The position numbers and the translations under genes are program-made. From NCBI GenBank assembly GCA_001642005.1, contig LWCA01000174.1, positions 1 through 44,445 on the forward strand: a DNA stretch of 44,445 bases, read 5' to 3'. Source of the stretch: Intoshia linei. Lineage: Eukaryota > Animalia > Orthonectida. The stretch's first letter is position 1. Each line of letters starts with the position of its first letter. Below the pieces are notes generated by a model, which worked only from the letters and a program-made list of their open reading frames with translations, was not told the DNA's origin and searched no databases. Positions 2,314 through 15,795 of the stretch are shown piece after piece.

Positions 2314-3941
2314 ATGCGAAGATCAACTAGATCAAGATCAAATTCTGCTAAAACACCACGTTCCCAATCGAATTCTAGAATTTTAAAATCAATTGAACCA
2401 ATTTTAATAACTGATTCACCAGAAAAGCCAATTCGTGCGAGACGTCGTTCCAGGAAGAGTAGTCCATTACCAGTCGTAAGAAAGGTATTTTCAGTTATTT
2501 TATAGTTTTTATTTTTTATTAGAGGACTAGATCAAGATCAAAAAAAAAAATTATTGTGCCTACAAAGAAAAATGACACTCCAATCAAAAAAAAGAAAGAG
2601 ACTGTAAATACAACACATGAACTAATACGATATATAATTAAATGTGCGTCATTTGACGTTAGATGGATATTTTCATTAATTCTTATTGAGTATGTGGTTA
2701 CACGTGGAAAATCAAGTATGCCGCTATCATATTCTAAATTCTTTGATTTATTCACATGGAAATCTCATGCTTACGTTGGTATACTTATTGTGACAACTTT
2801 TATTCTATCTATAATCCCTTTTGGACACAAAGTATCAGCGGTTTTGCGAAATGGGAAACGTCAGCATTTTGTATTGAACGGGTTAATTGTTTATAAAGTA
2901 ACAATCTGTGGAGTTCTATATTGCTTTTATTCAAATTTAGTTCGTCCATCATATATAATGGATAATTTGAATCAAATTCAAACGGCAATGTATATGTATG
3001 CTTTTGTTATATCTTGTTTTCTCTTTGTGTTTTACAGGAATAGAGATGTACCATCAAAATCAACAGTAGACATTTCATCGTCTAAAACAGCGAAACTTAT
3101 CGGTTGGATGGAAGGTTTTGTTAATGGATACGAATTGAACCCCCAGTGGTTATCGGTAAATCTTAAACTGTGGTTGATGAATCTTTCAATGATTCTTTCT
3201 TCGTGTGTGGCACTGGCTGTGGTATTTGATGTTTGGTCCAAAACAAAAATTACCGACATAAAGAACGTTTCCATTGATGACTTGTCAGTATATCTCAACT
3301 GTCTTAGCGTACTGATTATGTGCGCCATTTTTGTCAATTTTAACAAATGGATTGTTTACACGTACGGCATAATGTCGAGTGGACTGGGTTTTGAATTTGT
3401 AAACATTTTCGTATTTATCACGCACGTGGGTTATCTGAATTTGCCATTAATACATTTATATTTTTATGGATCAAATCGTTGTCTGTGGGCAATTGTTGGT
3501 GGTTTCATGGTGTCAGGTAAATGTAAAATATAAATTTCTTTATTTTTTTTAGTGATTGGATTAAGCACCATGTTGAAAGCTAACCTAGAAAAGTACAATA
3601 TCAAAACTCGATTAATGAGCCATGAATCAAAAAACATTATCGGCTCGGGCGCACGTAGGCTGTACAGTGGAAGTCTTTGGGGTGTAGTTAGACACCCCAA
3701 CTACTTGGGAAATTTAATATTTTATATTGGATTGAGCATGCATTGCCGTAATTTTTAAATTATTTTTAATTACTATGCTCTAGAACTCAGCATTATCCCA
3801 TGGCTATTACCATTGTATACAATTTTAATTGTTATCAAGTGTATATCACGAGTTGAGGAAAGTAGTAAATCAAGGCACGGCTCGAATTGGGTGGAATATT
3901 GCAGACGAGTGCCGTTTAAATTAATTCCTGGACTTTATTAG
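2314..3941 (+). CDS. LBR: Lamin B receptor-like / ERG4-ERG24 sterol reductase family protein with N-terminal RS-rich region
   Basis: Exons 2314-2484, 2523-3516, 3553-3747, 3784-3941; introns 38, 36, 36 nt, all GT-AG and frame-preserving. RS-rich N-terminus, many TM segments, GYELNPQW, SGSLWGVVRHPNYLG and terminal YCRRVPFKLIPGLY* motifs. Confidence 0.85.
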
Positions 3942-4716: not shown

Positions 4717-7700
4717 TTATTTACAATTTGAAAATCCAATAGTCTCATAATTAAATCCAATTTTTTTCATTTTTGCTGGATTTAGTATTATTCGACCATC
4801 AAAAATGTAGGCCGGTTTTTTCATATTGGAGTATATCTTTGAATATTCATAATTCTACATTTCAAAGATTATAATCTAACTAAGTTGACTGTTACGTACT
4901 ACGTCAAAACAGCACCTAGCTCTGCCGAGGGCACATCTTTATTTTTATTATACCAAAAAAATATATTCACGTTGAAAATCCAAGTTAAAAATCCTACTAT
5001 TCACTATTATCAATCCTTTAAAAGAGTAGTTCCCAAACTTGTTTAACTTGTTTTATATAACATTATTTACTTTAAAGTGAATTATTCCATCTTAATTTTG
5101 TTTTAACATTTTCAAACATAATATAACTTTTTAACACATTTAATGTAATTTTAGTGACCCGGGTGCTAGCACCTGCGGTTAAAAAACTGTGATATAAGAT
5201 ATATAAGCATTCAACATCACACAATACTAGGATTTGTAAATATTAATTGTAGTTCATCAAACCCTCAAAAAGGTATTTTTCAAGAATATTCAAAAATGTT
5301 TTTTATTTAATCAAATCAAGTGGTCAATATGTATAATGTACAAGGTCTATTTTTGAAAGTCTTATCGAAATTGTAAATATTTAATTAGGTATACATCAAA
5401 GTTACCTTAAATTCATCCCACGCAGTGCAAATTATAACTGCATTGCTTTTAAATGTAGCTTGTTCGATGTTTTGACATATTTCAACTATACAATACATTC
5501 ACATTATTTTTAAGTCCAATATAATTGTTTACATCAGTGTTTCCCAAAGTGGGCGATAGCGCCCACTTGGGGACGCTAAGGGGGCACTGAGAATTTTTAT
5601 AAAATTATAACAAATATGTCTTATCTACTATTTCATTTTTCAAAAGCTCATAAATAAAATAGGATTTTTATTGGCCAAGAAGTATGTTGATTTGGGTAAA
5701 AATTGGAATTCTGTCATTCTCGGACAAAAAAAAGATTAATTTGGACGGTCCTAAAGGATTCCAGTTTTATTGGCATGATTTGAGAAGGGAGAAAGAAGTT
5801 TACTGTACTCAGGAAAGCGGAGGCGGATTTGTAATGGTGTGAAGAGTATTTTTTCACAAATGAAAATCGAAATTGGCAATTCTGAATGGAAATCAGAACT
5901 TTGAAGATTATATATTTACCTTATCTGAGACTTTACTTCTATTTGCTCACTATCATTATAATACCGAGTATATTCTCAAACAAGATAATGCTCCAATTCA
6001 CACTTCTCGTAATGTAAAAGCATGGTTTGAAGATAACTGTCAATGTAATGGAGTGACCGTCGAAGTCTCCTGACTTAAACCTAATTGAAAATTTATGGGG
6101 CATTTTGGCAAGGTCCGTATATAAAAATCACAGGCATTTAATAATGTTGATCAGCTGACTTAGTTTATATTAAAATAATGGGAAAATATCCATCAAAATG
6201 TTATTCAAACCTTTGTGACTTAGATAAAGAATAGACGTCTTGAAGTTATGGTGAATAAAGAAGGAAAACCAGATTATTAAATTGTATATAAAGTATTTTT
6301 ATTTATTGGACCGATGTTTATTTCGCGGATAATTATTGACTTTGTGTGATAACGTTACATAGGACCTATGTTATTACGACCACTGTAATTGAAAGAGGAT
6401 TTAGTGGGGTTGTAAATATTCTAACTAAAAAGAGAAATTGAATAAAAATTAAAAAATGTAGTGATTTCAAACTTTTTCTTTCTAACATTAAATTTCCTGA
6501 TATCGATAACTTGTCACAGGCTCATCAACCTCAGGGTACTCATTAATTTTATACCGATTTATATAACTAAATATGTTATATTGTTTATAATATCTTTTTC
6601 CTTTAATTTTCATGAAATCATGCGAAACTTTTAGTGGTCTGCTATTTCTACTTCACTACTTCAATTGGTATCTCAATATTTAATTTATTATAATCGAAAA
6701 GGTTTATTTAATTTATATTGATTGTATTCATTTTTTATAGGGGGCGCATCATTTGAAAATTTTATAAGGGGGCACTGGAAAATAAAAGGTTGGGAAACAC
6801 TGGTTTATATATTTATTAAAGTTTACTTGATTTTGTATCTTCATTCAAATGTAAATCTCTGAATCTCATTTAAACATGACAATGAATTACAATAATACCT
6901 TATAATGGTTGTATTTTCTACTTTAGGGTCATAAATTGACAATATAGCACCTTCTTCTAAAAAATCTTTGCAAATATTTATTGCGGGAGAATTCCTATAA
7001 TTTATACCATATACTATGTAGTGTAATCTAGTAAATTTACCTTGTATCTGTTGTGTTTGGTTTGAACGCAAATCCTAATATTGCAAGTTTTTTTTTATAA
7101 ACATTATTGAACATGGTCTTGATAATTCTAGACACAAAATTGCATTGCTGATAATCATTAATGGTGATAATTGATTGCCAGTAATTGGCAATTTCAAATA
7201 GATTTAATGATTCGCAAAGGTACACTAGATGCATGATATCTTTTTTAAAACAACTTCCTCCAAATCCTATCCCTGCATTCAAATAAGATGATCCTATTCT
7301 TTTGTCTGCTCCAATAGCTTCAGCGACATTTTTAACATTAGCACCAGTTTTTTCACATAAGATGGAAATTGCATTTATACTGCTAATTCTTTGTGCCAAA
7401 AAAGCGTTAGCCGTCTTAAATTGTATTGAAAAATATTTTTTTAATTGTGGAAAAATGAGGCCCATTCTACAAAATTTTAGTGATTGTTCAAATTTTGAAT
7501 TCAATCTTAGCGTCCAGGTGTACAATATACAATTTACATATCAATTTTATAAATTTGGTTCGAGCTTATTTATTTTTAAAACTATAAATATACCCTTTTT
7601 TTCGTGGATTTTATTTATGTTACACTGTACAACACTCAAAAAACCAGGCACAACAAAATATATATTATTAAACTCTACGAAAAATTTGGTGAAAAATAGT

Positions 7701-11332: not shown

Positions 11333-14300
11333 ATGACTTATACACTTCCGAATAATATCAATTTTGGTTATTTGAAAAAAATATACGGCGGACACTCTGA
11401 TAGCACTCCTCATGATGCAATGAATTTGAATCATGTATATAATGCATATTATCAATACCGTGGAGGTTTATTAAAAACTCAGGTATAACTTTTAAAATTA
11501 AAAATTGGCCTGTACAAACTTTTAGATCCAACAAGCCATGAAATATACATGCGCAGATGAAATGTTTGTATATGAAAGTGAATACATGAATTTAATAGCA
11601 GAATTGGAACGTAGATATTATATTATTCGTGAAGTCGAATGGGAATTTAAAATGTTGGATTACTGTAATGTAAACAACATTACACTAGAAGATGCCAAGT
11701 CATTTTTAATTTATTTTTATAATTTTAGATATAGATGGCTAGCAAAAAGGACTCATGGTAAATTTTTTTCGGAATATGCATGGGATACGTTTTTATCAAA
11801 AAGGACATTCCCTTTATCCAGAGTAACTTTCGAACAATTACAGATTTTTCTCTGTTCTATTCCGTCTTACAAAGATCATCCAAGTTACTTTTATTAACGA
11901 ATTTTAATTTTTTTTAGTTGAAGTAAGATGCATTTTTATTTTAATAATATTGTAACATTGCACAGGTTGTTAAAATCAAAAAAGTCAAATTAATAGGTAA
12001 ATTTTATTTAAATTTTTAACCTCTTAACACAAATTTTTATAGAAAAGGTTAAAAAGGTAGATCCAATAGTGGTACAAGTTGAAGAACATATACCTGTACC
12101 AGAAATAAAAGAGGATATAAAAGAAAAGATATTACCGCCTCCCAATGGTTTTAACTTTAAAATTTAACTATAATTTCAACAGGAGAATCCGATTATCAAA
12201 AATCTTTACGAGAAAAATTACAACTAGCTATCGAATCTACAAATGAATCTGAAATTCAAAAATGTGTTAAAGATTGCTTGGAATCGGGTATATCTAAAAA
12301 CGATCAACAAATAGAAGAAGCAAATTTATTACTGAAACAGTTTGATTTGGCCAAAAGTAAAAATTATGAATATTTTTAATAATTTTAAAAATTTTAGAAT
12401 TAAGAAGTGGCATTGATCAAAAAAGTATAAAAATACTTGAAGATGCAATAGATAAAGTACGTCATTATGGTCTAGAAAATAACATGTCGAAATTAATGGA
12501 AGAAGCGATAAACGTATTGATGCAATTAAGAAGACTGGAAAGAATCAGGGCTGAAATATTAAAATTGACACAACCTACAGTTGCAGAAATTAAAAGTTAT
12601 AATAAACCACCAGAAGCTGTTCATCAAATTATGATTGCTACTTTTACATTGTTAGGTCATTCTGTCCAAGAAACAAAGGTATTGCATTAATATAGTGTTA
12701 TTCACTTTCGAAAATAAAATGAATGATAAGATGTATGATACATATTATATAATAATCTAAAAATGGATCTTAAATTAGATGAGGACTTCGAACTTCGGAG
12801 TCCGAACCTTGATATTTTAAGAAATGTGATAGATTTATTAAAAATGTACATTACAGTGTGTATTTAGATTTGGAAAACCGTGCAAGCTCTAATTAGTAAA
12901 ACCGGGAAAATGGGTTTGAAAAGACGATGTTTAGGTTGTGAGCCAGATAAATTATTGGAAAAAAATGCAATTGCAGCTAAAAAAATTATTATAAAATATG
13001 ATCTTGATGAAATAAGAGATGTATCTGCTGGAACAGCGACATTCTATTTATGGGTAAATTATCAACTTTTTTTTTAAATTGAATCATTACAGTCTAATTC
13101 CTCGTTAATGAAAATTTTTTAAACTAATGAAATATAATGAATTTCATCATTTATTTGTACAGTGATTGGGAAACCAATTTTAACTGTTTTAAAAAATTCA
13201 AAATCATATACTCCCCCTGATAATTTTTATATATTATAAGTAATGTAATTTAATTATGCATGTGCTCAATGAGTATTGCTAGTAAAATTAGGTTTATTTA
13301 TTTCTATTTAAGACTAATCGACATTTACATTTTAAACGCAAGGTTTACTTATTATTTCGAAGCTTTTTTTCTACCTTTACTGGATTTTTAAAATAAAATT
13401 AATGAAACATTTTAGCAATTTGAAATGTATTATTCCATTATTTTATATACTCCACAAATAGTATTAGTAGTTTACCAGTAGTTTAGAATTAAGTCAAAAT
13501 ATAAAAACATGAATAATTATTTATTATAAAAATATTAAAAAGAGAACCTTGAGCTATGATTATGATATAATAAATTTTTGATGTTTACTAAATTTAATTT
13601 GATATCATTTAATATTTAGTATAATTGATTAATCCATTATTATAAAAATATATACAAAATTTTTGTGGCCCTTATTTTATGTTGTTCCAAATAGAATTTT
13701 TTTCGATGGACCCGTTTGTAAACTCTGGTATATAACATATTATATTCGGCTTTGTCTTAATGCATTTGTTAATATATAATTAATTCTAAGCATTTTTTTT
13801 AATTTTTTTGAAGCTAACTGACTGTGCTTGATAGTTGAATTTTTTTTTTTGAAATTTTGACTATCCTAATAATGAATCATGTTTTTGATTGGTATAATCG
13901 CACATTCCAAGTTTTCATAAAAATATTTAAAGTTTTGATCAATTTAGGTTAAATTTTAGCCATAATTCTTCAAGTACAGTCAGTATTTTTTTATAAAATA
14001 TTTATTTTCTATTAGTAAAATTAAAAAATTGACGAAAAGAATGATAAACACATGATCAAAAACAAGAAAAGTATATTAAGAATTTTTTGATTTACCTTTA
14101 TCAATTCAATTTTTAATTAAATTCAGGTTTAAAATGTTTGCTTGTAGCTTGAATTAAGTTTATTAGATTTGTTTGCTATACATACTGTACTATTATCTTT
14201 GTATTATCAAGTATTAACTATGGGTAATTTTATTTTGTGATTAAATCATAAACCCCTAAAAGTTAATGTACTTGAGAAAAATACGTAGTTTGTTAATCGG

Positions 14301-14434
14301 GAATTTTTCCGTTAATTAGAAATTAGACTGTATTATATATCAAATATTAAATTTATGATTAGGCCATGACAATGATAGAGGAATATGATTTCTCCAAAGG
14401 TCTTCAAATTAAAGATGAAAAAAATCAAAATTAA
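11333..14434 (+). CDS. Uncharacterised protein: degenerate EF-hand-like N-terminus, Lys/Glu/Pro linker, helical region, C-terminal dynein heavy chain stalk microtubule-binding-like domain
   Basis: Exons 11333-11482, 11526-11883 (may contain an in-frame 30/36-nt intron from 11699), 11918-11922, 11966-11996, 12043-12147, 12183-12356, 12398-12678, 12868-13053, probable last exon 14363-14434; one continuous frame. AEIKSYNKPPEAVHQIMIATFTLLG...WKTVQ...VSAGTATFYLWAMTM. Last exon less certain. Confidence 0.75.
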
Positions 14435-14793: not shown

Positions 14794-15795
14794 CATTTTA
14801 ATTGCAGCACCTCTTTGGGTTTTAAAAAAATATGAAGGTAAATGTTATTTGTTATAAATATATTTTAAAATGTTCACGTTTTGGCATAAAAGGTTTTATT
14901 AAAATGGTTTTTACCATTTACTGAGTAAGGGTTTTCAATTTGTGAGAAAAATATTTTATTTACATGTTAGTTATTGTTTGTTTTGAATGTGTAAAATCTG
15001 GGTCCCAAACAAAGTTCAAATTATTATTTTTTGAAAATTGATAATGGGGTTTATATTTAAAATATATACTCAATTTGACATATTCTAGTCAATTTGGTGT
15101 TTTGAAAATTATTTTTATATATATTGTCGATTTGTATCGATCAATAGTAAATATGTGACATCGGTTAAAAAGTTGTAAACTATTTTAAAATCATTTATCA
15201 TTATTAATTTAATTTCATGTGGAAAATCAATTTATTAATGTCATTAATTTTAATTATAGAATATGAAATTGAGGGAACTGTAAATCATATTTGTATGTAA
15301 AATGTAAAAATGCCTTTTTTTAAATATTACAGCAAAATAATAACAATAATTCAATTTGGTATACCTTTAATTATACTGATTTACATAAGTATTTCAATTC
15401 TCTCACTAATTTTCAAAAGTTTTAAATGGAGGAGTACAAGAATAAAAAAACGAAACAGTAGTATTAAAAATAAATTGCCTGTGAGTAGATTTCAATATTT
15501 AAAATGTAGTTTCAAATCAAAGATGGTTATAACAAAACGACATTACAAGTCTATTTTGGTGTTGGCATTAATAGTACTGATTTTTATAATCTTGTGGCTT
15601 CCCATCAATGTTATAAATATCTTGTATGATTACAATATCACCTTAGAATACAACCAATGGGTAATTTCTACGTGTCACATGTTGGTATAATTGTCTGCTT
15701 TTATACACCCTATTATATATGGATGGCTAAATGTGGAAATGAAGGATAAATTTGTCAGAATTTTTAAATGTTGTGTTATAGTATCCTACAGATAA
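14794..15795 (+). pseudogene. Rhodopsin-class (NPY/NPF/prolactin-releasing-peptide receptor-like) GPCR pseudogene, TM4-TM7
   Basis: Exon 14794-14837 (ILIAAPLW) and exon 15260-15795 with QFGIPLIILIYI (TM5), FIILWLPINVINILYD (TM6), CHMLV*LSAFIHPIIYGWLN (TM7). In-frame TAA at 15298-15300 and 15688-15690. Confidence 0.75.

What the first reader, a model, noticed from the sequence alone, without database searches (positions are those of the whole stretch)
11333..14434. Stand-alone dynein microtubule-binding-like domain fused to EF-hand-like repeats
Seen: one spliced frame ends in ILKLTQPTVAEIKSYNKPPEAVHQIMIATFTLLG-(x)-WKTVQALI-(x)-DEIRDVSAGTATFYLWAMTM. Known: this matches the dynein heavy chain stalk tip (L..L.K.DI.E.KS...PP..V..V..AV..LLG...W...SxAA..LC.WV.AM), which normally sits inside a >4000-aa motor. 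Here there is no AAA domain; the N-terminus instead has degenerate EF-hand-like segments (WEFKMLDYCNVNNITLEDAK, VTFEQL). Inference: a motor-less, possibly Ca2+-modulated microtubule tether or a competitor for the dynein binding site, perhaps ciliary. Retention in a compact genome suggests function.
Basis: partly seen in the sequence, partly recalled or inferred. Interest (0 to 1): 0.8.

Follow-up and report, generated by a model that had tools for sequence, protein, structure and literature searches.

The report
Motor-less protein with dynein microtubule-binding domain
This small Intoshia linei gene encodes a non-motor protein whose tail is a true relative of the dynein motor's microtubule-gripping tip, joined to a degenerate EF-hand head, and it belongs to an unstudied family found across marine invertebrates.

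Summary
Window 11333-14434 (+) is one 8-exon gene of the orthonectid Intoshia linei, annotated as hypothetical protein OAF70210.1 (415 aa). That annotation misses the last exon.

- **C-terminal domain.** The last ~130 residues are homologous to the dynein stalk-tip microtubule-binding domain (MTBD). Profile-profile comparison with Intoshia's own dyneins gives 98% probability, E 8.6e-14. The family profile's best PDB hits are dynein MTBDs (E 4e-5 to 4e-6). The AlphaFold model superposes on solved MTBDs (Z 13.9, rmsd 1.7 Å over 119 residues; a domain-only orthologue model gives Z 17.4, 1.6 Å over 132).
- **No motor.** There is no AAA module in the protein or the locus.
- **N-terminal domain.** Residues 1-158 have an EF-hand fold, but the Ca2+ ligands are degenerate in Intoshia.
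- **Family.** The EF-hand / charged spacer / helical repeats / MTBD-like architecture occurs from sponges and ctenophores to amphioxus and tunicates, named only "trichohyalin-like". No vertebrate, arthropod or nematode member was listed. The same C-terminal module also ends KY/hillarin-like transglutaminase proteins, a CLCA-like protein and proteins with predicted transmembrane segments.

Microtubule binding is inferred, not shown. Three of six yeast dynein contact residues are kept and one is charge-reversed. I found no description of this in the held literature.

The parts
11333..11482 (+). Exon 1 (aa 1-50): first EF-hand-like helix-loop-helix, with a degenerate loop
   Evidence: ATG preceded by an in-frame stop two codons upstream. 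Matches P0001. Helices 11-24, 32-42 and 48-58 in the AF2 model.
11526..11698 (+). Exon 2a (aa 51-108): EF-hand-like domain, holding WEFKMLDYCNVNNITLEDAK (EF3 equivalent)
   Evidence: Family profile hit on 11523-11879, E 1.9e-34. Followed by a 30-nt GT..AG intron, 11699-11728, as in the annotation.
11729..11883 (+). Exon 2b (aa 108-160): end of the EF-hand-like domain, including VTFEQLQIFLCSIP
   Evidence: Conserved in orthologues as VSFAEIEVxLCNIP. My first model, which spliced this out at 11823, was wrong.
11918..11996 (+). Optional linker exons, unresolved: 5-nt microexon 11918-11922 plus exon 11966-11996. They would replace the annotated 159-nt intron 11884-12042 with three introns of 34-46 nt.
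Evidence: The frame is kept and 13 aa are added to the disordered linker. Orthologues cannot decide; RNA data are needed.
12043..12147 (+). Exon 4 (aa 160-195): K/E/P-rich disordered linker
   Evidence: pLDDT below 50 for residues 159-194. The linker is 47 aa here against a median of 196 aa of E/R/K-rich spacer in orthologues.
12183..12356 (+). Exon 5 (aa 195-253): first ~45-aa helical repeat
   Evidence: Family profile hit, E 6.9e-8. Helices 198-213, 216-228 and 236-260, pLDDT above 94.
12398..12678 (+). Exon 6 (aa 253-346): second helical repeat, CC1-like helix (from about 12487), then MTBD helices H1-H2 with the K-P-P motif
   Evidence: 342 database hits at E<=1e-3. Profile hit 4e-39. Aligns with H1 of Intoshia's own dyneins.
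12868..13053 (+). Exon 7 (aa 347-408): MTBD H3-H6, with the invariant W348, K364, R365 and S399 and the basic loop GKTGK..LKRR
   Evidence: Profile hit 6.9e-28. Invariant columns. Donor GTAAAT at 13054.
13054..14362 (+). Intron 7 (1309 nt), swollen by a repeat element flanked by 27-nt inverted repeats (13088-13114 and 14306-14332)
   Evidence: Inverted repeat I1, 81% complementary. Pieces 70-85% identical to 13 other places in the genome. The gene's other introns are 30-189 nt.
14363..14434 (+). Exon 8 (23 aa plus stop): end of H6 and the short CC2-like helix, AMTMIEEYDF...; missing from the public annotation
   Evidence: Orthologues continue after the conserved W with A[TIS][TA]M[IV]EE. MIEE occurs once in all six frames of the window, here. 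AG acceptor in phase 0. By itself too short for a significant HMM score.

Best explanation
The gene encodes a ~431-aa non-motor protein built as a two-ended tether.

Shown:
- The C-terminal ~130 residues are an evolutionary relative of the dynein heavy-chain stalk tip. They form a short CC1/CC2 helix stub carrying the six-helix MTBD.
- The N-terminal ~158 residues have a four-EF-hand-like fold whose Ca2+ ligands have decayed in Intoshia.
- A disordered charged spacer and two ~45-aa helical repeats lie between them.
- The protein is the single-copy Intoshia member of a family conserved across Metazoa.
- The MTBD-like part is its most conserved region.

Inferred:
- The MTBD-like domain docks on the acidic outer surface of microtubules at or near the dynein site, using the conserved H1 glutamate and arginine/lysine, the H3 lysine and a family-specific basic loop (GKTGK..LKRR).
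- Because no AAA ring or long stalk can shift the coiled-coil registry, binding would be constitutive rather than nucleotide-gated.
- The EF-hand-like head would hold a partner protein, in Intoshia probably without Ca2+.
- The protein would then link that partner to microtubules at a distance set by the spacer.
For: Homology:
- hhalign of the family against Intoshia dynein stalk tips: 98.1%, E 8.6e-14.
- The family C-domain HMM hits three Intoshia dyneins at 27-32 bits across H1-H6.
- PDB sequence search has DNAH6 and yeast or mouse dynein MTBDs as best hits.

Fold:
- The AF2 model of P0001 has pLDDT 86.5.
- VIA gives Z 13.9, 1.7 A over 119 residues to the human inner-arm dynein MTBD, and Z 11-12 to five other MTBDs.
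- A domain-only orthologue model (pLDDT 89.7) was searched against 48,161 PDB representatives. The top five hits are dynein stalk/MTBD entries, Z 13.1-17.9. Only 10 chains reach Z>=8, and unrelated folds score 5.9 or less.
- All but one of the listed Foldseek hits (ranks 1-50) are dynein MTBD/stalk structures or chains of dynein-containing axoneme entries.

Selection: the MTBD-like part is 54% identical (median) to orthologues, against 30% for the EF part and 25% for the repeats.

Microtubule-facing chemistry:
- The yeast E3122 equivalent is E in 48/48 sequences, R3124 is R/K in 48/48, and R3152 is K in 41/48.
- K357, K360, K364 and R365 are basic in 48/48.
- Net charge is +6 (family median +4), against +1 to +4 for Intoshia dynein MTBDs.

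Context:
- The same module ends cytoskeleton-type KY/hillarin-like proteins.
- It also lies C-terminal to the predicted (hydropathy-scan) transmembrane segments of CLCA-like, single-pass and multi-pass proteins.
- This fits an intracellular docking module.
Against: - No binding experiment exists.
- Three of the six yeast salt-bridge positions are not kept. K3117 is Q in 46/48 sequences. R3159 is G in 47/48. The position two residues before the invariant H6 serine, which I equate with R3201 by motif analogy, is D in 47/48.
- Pfam MT does not detect the Intoshia protein.
- Radial-spoke chains 7jtk_C and 7jrj_I also match the fold. Their molecule names were not checked, and their radial-spoke position suggests they do not bind microtubules, so fold alone does not give function.
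- The AF2 models resemble the unbound or low-affinity MTBD structures best (3err 1.6 A, against 3j1t 5.3 A). This is expected for a model without a ligand.
Confidence: 0.55

Rival explanations
1. The MTBD-like fold has been re-used as a protein-protein interaction module that no longer touches tubulin. The protein would then be a scaffold for some other partner.
For: - Half of the dynein contact residues are replaced by near-invariant non-basic residues (Q311, G356, D397), which looks like selection for a different surface.
- Radial-spoke chains 7jtk_C and 7jrj_I match the fold at Z 7.8-12.1. Their identity was not verified, but their radial-spoke position suggests they do not bind microtubules.
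- The module is attached to very different proteins.
Against: - The invariant H1 glutamate and the basic H1 and H3 residues are exactly those that contact tubulin in dynein.
- The domain is as basic as real MTBDs, or more so.
- Another fold match, 9ya2_L, is a chain of a Toxoplasma intraconoidal-microtubule cryo-EM model. It is probably ICMAP2's globular domain, which PMC12819142 resolves bound to the outside of the microtubule; the chain identity is inferred from residue range and size.
Confidence: 0.3
2. It binds microtubules mainly to compete with dyneins for the intradimer site, acting as a brake or regulator of axonemal or cytoplasmic dynein rather than as a tether.
For: It has the same fold and part of the same contact set as dynein. 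The organism keeps many dynein heavy chains, with 24 PF12777 hits in the genome.
Against: Nothing specific supports this. The conserved EF-hand head, the spacer and the fusions to enzymes and membrane proteins argue for linking rather than simple blocking.
Confidence: 0.1
3. It is a Ca2+ sensor whose EF-hands switch microtubule affinity.
For: EF-hand fold. Pfam EF-hand_6/_7/_1 hits in 22, 13 and 9 of 48 orthologues.
Against: - The hits are marginal, about 25 bits, at the cut-off.
- Loop position 12 is Q in the family.
- The Intoshia EF1 has no loop aspartates, and EF3 lacks ligands at positions 3 and 5.
- The Intoshia protein has no EF-hand Pfam hit.
Confidence: 0.1
4. It is a dynein gene fragment, a pseudogene or an annotation artefact.
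For: None beyond the motif resemblance. The public model does have a wrong 3' end.
Against: - The reading frame is intact across 8 exons with GT..AG introns.
- The four larger exon blocks (2, 5, 6, 7) are hit colinearly by the family profile.
- Orthologues with the same architecture occur in at least ten animal phyla.
- The C-domain is 54% identical to orthologues.
Confidence: 0.02

Closest known systems
Dynein heavy chain stalk tip / microtubule-binding domain (Pfam MT, PF12777; e.g. PDB 3ERR, 6KIO, 8I3J, 6RZA)
   Same: Six-helix H1-H6 domain on a short antiparallel CC1/CC2 stub. Shares the motifs L-x-x-x-[IV]-x-E-I-[KR]-S-x-x-x-P-P, the W at the start of H3, and S-x-x-A-x-x-x-x-x-W in H6. 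Profile-profile E 8.6e-14. rmsd 1.6-1.7 A.
   Different: No AAA+ ring, no ~15-nm stalk and no linker; the whole protein is ~431 aa. It has a 3-residue insertion with a conserved basic GKTGK..LKRR loop. Three of six tubulin-contact positions are changed. It scores below the Pfam threshold in 47 of 48 members.
Unnamed metazoan orthogroup annotated 'trichohyalin-like' or 'EF-hand domain-containing protein' (e.g. Lottia LOTGIDRAFT_227829, Aplysia, Lingula, Branchiostoma, Nematostella, Sycon, Mnemiopsis)
   Same: Same order of EF-hand-like head, charged spacer, two helical repeats and MTBD-like tail. Intoshia is a single-copy member.
   Different: The Intoshia spacer is cut to 47 aa, against a median of 196 aa. 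Its EF loops are more degenerate.
KY (kyphoscoliosis peptidase) / hillarin-like transglutaminase proteins of invertebrates, a CLCA-like protein, and proteins with predicted transmembrane segments that carry the same C-terminal module
   Same: They share the helical repeat plus the MTBD-like domain at the C-terminus (E 1e-25 to 1e-41 to the orthologue domain). One oyster protein has three copies.
   Different: Their N-terminal parts are unrelated (Transglut_core plus Ig-like_KY, CLCA plus VWA, or predicted TM helices). None was found in Intoshia.
Toxoplasma intraconoidal-microtubule chain 9YA2_L (probably ICMAP2's globular domain) and radial-spoke chains 7JTK_C and 7JRJ_I
   Same: Non-dynein chains whose solved structures match the domain model (Z 10.5, 2.9 A over 124 residues; Z 12.1; Z 7.8). 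The first is a chain of a cryo-EM model of the microtubule with its bound proteins.
   Different: Only fold similarity at 9-15% identity, with no sequence signal. Chain identities are inferred, not verified. The spoke proteins are probably not microtubule binders, judging from their radial-spoke position.
Calmodulin and penta-EF-hand proteins (sorcin, calpain domain VI, grancalcin)
   Same: The N-terminal 158 residues superpose at Z 8-10 over 113-146 residues.
   Different: 4-10% identity. No canonical Ca2+ loops in Intoshia.

Membership tests
Dynein MTBD / stalk (Pfam MT, PF12777) | Scores above the Pfam gathering threshold (24 bits) | tested here: not met
   No hit for any exon, for the locus in six frames or for P0001. 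1 of 48 orthologues passes, at 26 bits.
Dynein MTBD / stalk (Pfam MT, PF12777) | Detectable sequence homology to bona fide dynein MTBDs across H1-H6 | tested here: met
   hhalign 98.1%, E 8.6e-14, 112 columns. PDB profile searches 4.3e-5 and 4.4e-6. 27-32 bits to Intoshia's own dyneins.
Dynein MTBD / stalk (Pfam MT, PF12777) | Six-helix bundle at the tip of an antiparallel coiled coil | tested here: met
   Z 13.9, 1.7 A over 119 residues (8i3j) and Z 11-12 to 6l4p, 6kjo, 6kio, 6rza and 6rzb. Domain-only model: Z 17.4, 1.6 A over 132 residues (3err), with a clear gap to unrelated folds.
Dynein MTBD / stalk (Pfam MT, PF12777) | Embedded between AAA4 and AAA5 of a motor longer than 4000 aa | tested here: not met
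   The protein is 415-431 aa with no AAA Pfam hit. Flanking genes leave no room for a motor.
Dynein MTBD / stalk (Pfam MT, PF12777) | Conserved tubulin-contact residues (yeast K3117, E3122, R3124, R3152, R3159, R3201; PMC7042235) | tested here: inconclusive
   Kept: E316 (48/48), R/K318 (48/48), K349 (41/48). Changed: Q311 (46/48), G356 (47/48, with K/R357 next to it), D397 (47/48, with R396 next to it). The H6 mapping is by motif analogy.
Dynein MTBD / stalk (Pfam MT, PF12777) | Binds microtubules | not testable with these tools
   Needs co-sedimentation, TIRF or cryo-EM.
EF-hand Ca2+-binding proteins | Paired helix-loop-helix fold | tested here: met
   Model residues 3-164 match calmodulin, troponin C, sorcin and calpain PEF at Z 8.4-10.1.
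EF-hand Ca2+-binding proteins | Pfam EF-hand profile match | tested here: not met
   None for P0001. 22 of 48 orthologues match EF-hand_6 at about the cut-off.
EF-hand Ca2+-binding proteins | Canonical 12-residue loop (D1, D/N3, D/S/N5, G6, E12) | tested here: not met
   The Intoshia EF1 region (YGGHSDSTPHDAM) has no loop. EF3 is DYCNVNNITLED. Orthologues have Q at position 12.
Metazoan EF-hand / spacer / MTBD-like orthogroup ('trichohyalin-like') | Colinear homology of both the N-terminal and the C-terminal domain | tested here: met
   N domain E 1e-24 and C domain E 7e-42 to the Plakobranchus orthologue. The four larger exon blocks are hit in order by the 48-sequence profile.

The most novel reading that the evidence does not exclude
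Early in animal evolution the dynein stalk tip was copied out of a motor gene. It became a free-standing, mobile microtubule-docking module and so a new class of non-motor MAP domain. Today it anchors EF-hand adaptors, KY/hillarin-type transglutaminase-like proteins and several membrane proteins to microtubules at the dynein footprint in most marine invertebrate phyla. It was lost in vertebrates, arthropods and nematodes, which is why it has gone unnoticed.
Probability: 0.4. Interest if true: 0.8.

Novelty: new variant of a known kind. Interest (0 to 1): 0.68.

Why it matters
To my knowledge, the dynein MTBD is treated as a part found only inside dynein heavy chains, where its microtubule affinity is set by sliding of the long stalk. 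This is own knowledge, not tested here.

A conserved family that keeps the MTBD and a stub of the stalk but has no motor would give three things:
- a natural "registry-locked" MTBD for studying what sets affinity;
- a candidate new family of microtubule tethers, and possible dynein competitors, in ciliated marine animals;
- an example of domain escape from a giant motor gene.

It also gives a function lead for dozens of proteins currently named "trichohyalin-like", "caldesmon-like" and similar, and for the C-terminal ends of invertebrate KY/hillarin proteins. For Intoshia, the gene survived extreme genome reduction with its spacer trimmed but its MTBD-like domain 54% identical to other phyla, which argues for a needed role. 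On the practical side, the public Intoshia annotation lacks the last exon.

Tried and rejected
- **My first gene model.** It used a donor at 11823 and an exon at 11966-11996. It was wrong: orthologues show that VTFEQLQIFLCSIP is coding.
- **Pfam on single exons** gave only noise hits: RusA, Phage_TAC_15 and DUF2838.
- **PF12777 in six frames** over the genome found 24 dynein pieces but not this locus.
- **phmmer of single exons** against Intoshia's own dyneins was weak, best E 0.003 in a tiny database. Only profiles gave significance.
- **Foldseek with the whole 415-aa model** gave no E<=0.001, although all top rows were dyneins. A domain-only model was needed.
- **A PrgX_C_TPR hit** (18 bits) and weak 14-3-3 matches for the helical repeats were judged non-specific.
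- **Exon 8** cannot reach a significant HMM score on its own. It is accepted on the motif, phase and uniqueness argument.
- **Literature.** Searches for PF12777, MTBD-like domain, dynein-like MTBD, and Intoshia plus dynein found no description of such a protein. The radial-spoke paper (PMC7855293) is not held, so the identity of chain 7jtk_C stays unverified.
- **Pseudogene or dynein-fragment reading** was rejected on conservation.
Full report
**What is there.** The window is AT-rich (about 25% GC) eukaryotic DNA from a 41.6-Mb, 3520-contig assembly. An exact database match identifies the organism as the orthonectid Intoshia linei and the gene product as OAF70210.1 / A0A177B7W0, "hypothetical protein A3Q56_02029", 415 aa (P0001).

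- The annotated exons are 11333-11482, 11526-11698, 11729-11883, 12043-12147, 12183-12356, 12398-12678 and 12868-13077. They reproduce P0001 exactly.
- The introns are 43, 30, 159, 35, 41 and 189 nt, all GT..AG.
- My own first model spliced out VTFEQL. Orthologues proved this wrong.

**How the spliced model was handled.** I searched the model exon by exon, by reference. The full 431-aa model that includes the last exon has no reference, so the joined step was left out: that model was never searched or folded. The database protein P0001, which a tool returned, stood in for it. In a script the annotated exons were concatenated only to check that they equal P0001.

**The 3' end.** The annotation reads through the donor GTAAAT at 13054 and ends ...FYLWVNYQLFF.

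- Orthologues continue after the conserved W with A[TIS][TA]M[IV]EE.
- The window has AMTMIEEYDF... at 14363, directly after an AG and in phase 0.
- MIEE occurs once in 88,886 six-frame positions of the window, exactly there.
- Intron 7 (1309 nt) is swollen by a repeat bounded by 27-nt inverted repeats. Pieces of it recur elsewhere in the genome.

**Is the C-terminus a dynein MTBD?** Single-sequence tests are weak or negative.

- Pfam finds nothing in any exon, at the locus in six frames or in P0001.
- phmmer of exon 6 against Intoshia's own dynein loci gives only E 0.003, although it always aligns the same L..x.EIKSxxxPP motif.

Profiles settle it.

- Exon 6 alone finds 342 proteins at E<=1e-3 in 1.84 billion.
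- From these and a word search I aligned 48 orthologues (A1).
- The best PDB hits of A1 are dynein MTBDs: DNAH6 at E 4.3e-5 aligned from H1 to H6, and yeast dynein at 3.4e-4.
- A broader alignment, A2, gives yeast MTBD at 4.4e-6.
- A C-domain HMM hits three Intoshia dyneins at 27-32 bits over the whole MTBD.
- hhalign of A1 against seven Intoshia dynein stalk tips (A3) gives 98.1% probability, E 8.6e-14, over 112 columns.

**Structure.** AF2 of P0001 with A1 has mean pLDDT 86.5.

- VIA-align puts residues 293-415 on the human inner-arm dynein-d MTBD at Z 13.9, rmsd 1.7 A over 119 residues. Five other MTBDs score Z 11-12.
- A domain-only model of a sea-cucumber fragment (P0151) has pLDDT 89.7 and pTM 0.81.
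- That model, searched without pre-filtering against 48,161 PDB representatives, gives dynein stalk/MTBD entries as its top five hits: Z 17.9, 17.4 (3err, 1.6 A over 132 residues), 15.1, 13.7 and 13.1. Only 10 chains reach Z>=8, and unrelated folds score 5.9 or less.
- All but one of the listed Foldseek hits (ranks 1-50) are dynein MTBD/stalk structures or chains of dynein-containing axoneme entries.

**The rest of the protein.**

- Residues 1-158 fold as four EF-hand-like helix-loop-helix units, at Z 8-10 to calmodulin, troponin C, sorcin and calpain PEF.
- Of the 48 orthologues, 22 hit EF-hand_6, 13 EF-hand_7 and 9 EF-hand_1. The scores are marginal and mostly fall on the first hand.
- Intoshia itself has no EF-hand hit, and its loops lack the ligand residues. 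The family as a whole has Q at loop position 12. Ca2+ sensing is therefore doubtful here.
- Residues 159-194 are disordered. This spacer region (P0001 154-200 equivalents) is 47 aa in Intoshia, against a median of 196 aa of E/R/K-rich sequence in orthologues. That explains the "trichohyalin-like" names.
- Residues 195-282 are two ~45-aa helical repeats with no Pfam family.
- The MTBD-like part is the best conserved: 54% median identity, against 30% for the EF part and 25% for the repeats.
- The gene is single-copy in Intoshia.

**Distribution.**

- The same architecture occurs in molluscs, brachiopods, nemerteans, annelids, bryozoans, hemichordates, echinoderms, amphioxus, tunicates, cnidarians, sponges and ctenophores.
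- No vertebrate, arthropod or nematode protein appears in any list, including a search restricted to the C-domain. This is suggestive, not proof of absence.
- The C-terminal module, with its preceding repeat, also ends KY/hillarin-like proteins (Transglut_core plus Ig-like_KY) and a CLCA plus VWA protein with a predicted TM segment before the module.
- It also ends single-pass and multi-pass proteins with predicted TM segments (simple hydropathy scan), including one from a bdelloid rotifer. One oyster protein has three copies.

**How it probably works.** The yeast MTBD binds tubulin through K3117, E3122 and R3124 (H1), R3152 and R3159 (H3) and R3201 (H6) (PMC7042235). I mapped these through the HMM alignment, whose numbering is self-consistent for five of the six residues.

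| Yeast residue | Family equivalent | Frequency |
|---|---|---|
| E3122 | E316 | 48/48 |
| R3124 | R/K318 | 48/48 |
| R3152 | K349 | 41/48 |
| K3117 | Q311 | 46/48 |
| R3159 | G356 (K/R357 adjacent) | 47/48 |
| H6 arginine position (by motif analogy) | D397 (R396 adjacent) | 47/48 |

- A family-specific loop, GKTGK..LKRR, adds basic residues: K357, K360, K364 and R365 are basic in 48/48 sequences.
- Net charge is +6 in Intoshia (family median +4), against +1 to +4 for Intoshia dynein MTBDs.
- I therefore favour, at about 55%, constitutive docking on the acidic microtubule surface, with the EF-hand head holding a partner.
- The main rival, at about 30%, is that the fold now binds something else.
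Matches to radial-spoke chains (7jtk_C, 7jrj_I) argue that fold alone proves nothing.

**Novelty.** Searches of the held literature found no description of a non-dynein protein with a dynein-type MTBD. The nearest paper describes a non-motile dynein heavy chain, DNAHX, which is still a full dynein. Pfam has no family for the module. I rate the finding a new variant of a known kind: a known domain in an undescribed, motor-less and mobile context.

Noticed in passing
window 13054-14362: Intron 7 is 1309 nt, while the gene's other introns are 30-189 nt. It holds a 27-nt inverted-repeat pair (13088-13114 and 14306-14332) and segments 70-85% identical to 13 other places in the genome. This looks like a TIR-type transposon remnant inserted in a small intron.
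   Followed up: partly
window 13054-13077 and 14363-14434: The public annotation OAF70210.1 reads through the exon 7 donor and ends VNYQLFF. It misses the conserved last exon, AMTMIEEYDF....
   Followed up: yes
window 11699-11728 and 11884-12042: There is a 30-nt GT..AG intron in the annotation. There is also an alternative reading of the 159-nt intron as three 34-46-nt introns around a 5-nt microexon (TTGAA, 11918-11922) and a 31-nt exon (11966-11996). Both readings keep the frame and neither can be decided without RNA data.
   Followed up: partly
window 7040-7525 (-), 2556-3530 (+), 15310-15687 (+): Neighbouring exons encode a UDP-glucose/GDP-mannose dehydrogenase central domain (E 7e-28), an ERG4/ERG24 sterol-reductase-like protein (E 1e-6) and a rhodopsin-family GPCR piece (E 6.5e-7, just under the cut-off).
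   Followed up: partly
PDB chains 9ya2_L, 9e5c_2e, 9fqr_Xl, 7jtk_C, 7jrj_I (not in the window): Chains in solved axoneme, conoid and radial-spoke structures, apparently non-dynein, match the MTBD-like model at Z 7.8-12.1. The Toxoplasma paper that deposited 9YA2 never mentions a dynein-like fold. Chain identities were not verified.
   Followed up: partly
P0002 (Pinctada imbricata, 1437 aa); P0096 (Branchiostoma, 1480 aa): A KY-like oyster protein carries three tandem copies of the repeat plus MTBD-like module. An amphioxus CLCA plus VWA protein has a predicted TM segment (887-905) and then the module at 1350-1472.
   Followed up: partly
G000 contigs C2808, C394, C490, C2101, C3117, C2238, C2248 and others: The reduced Intoshia genome still holds many dynein heavy-chain stalk regions, with 24 PF12777 hits. 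Several are in long uninterrupted open frames.
   Followed up: no
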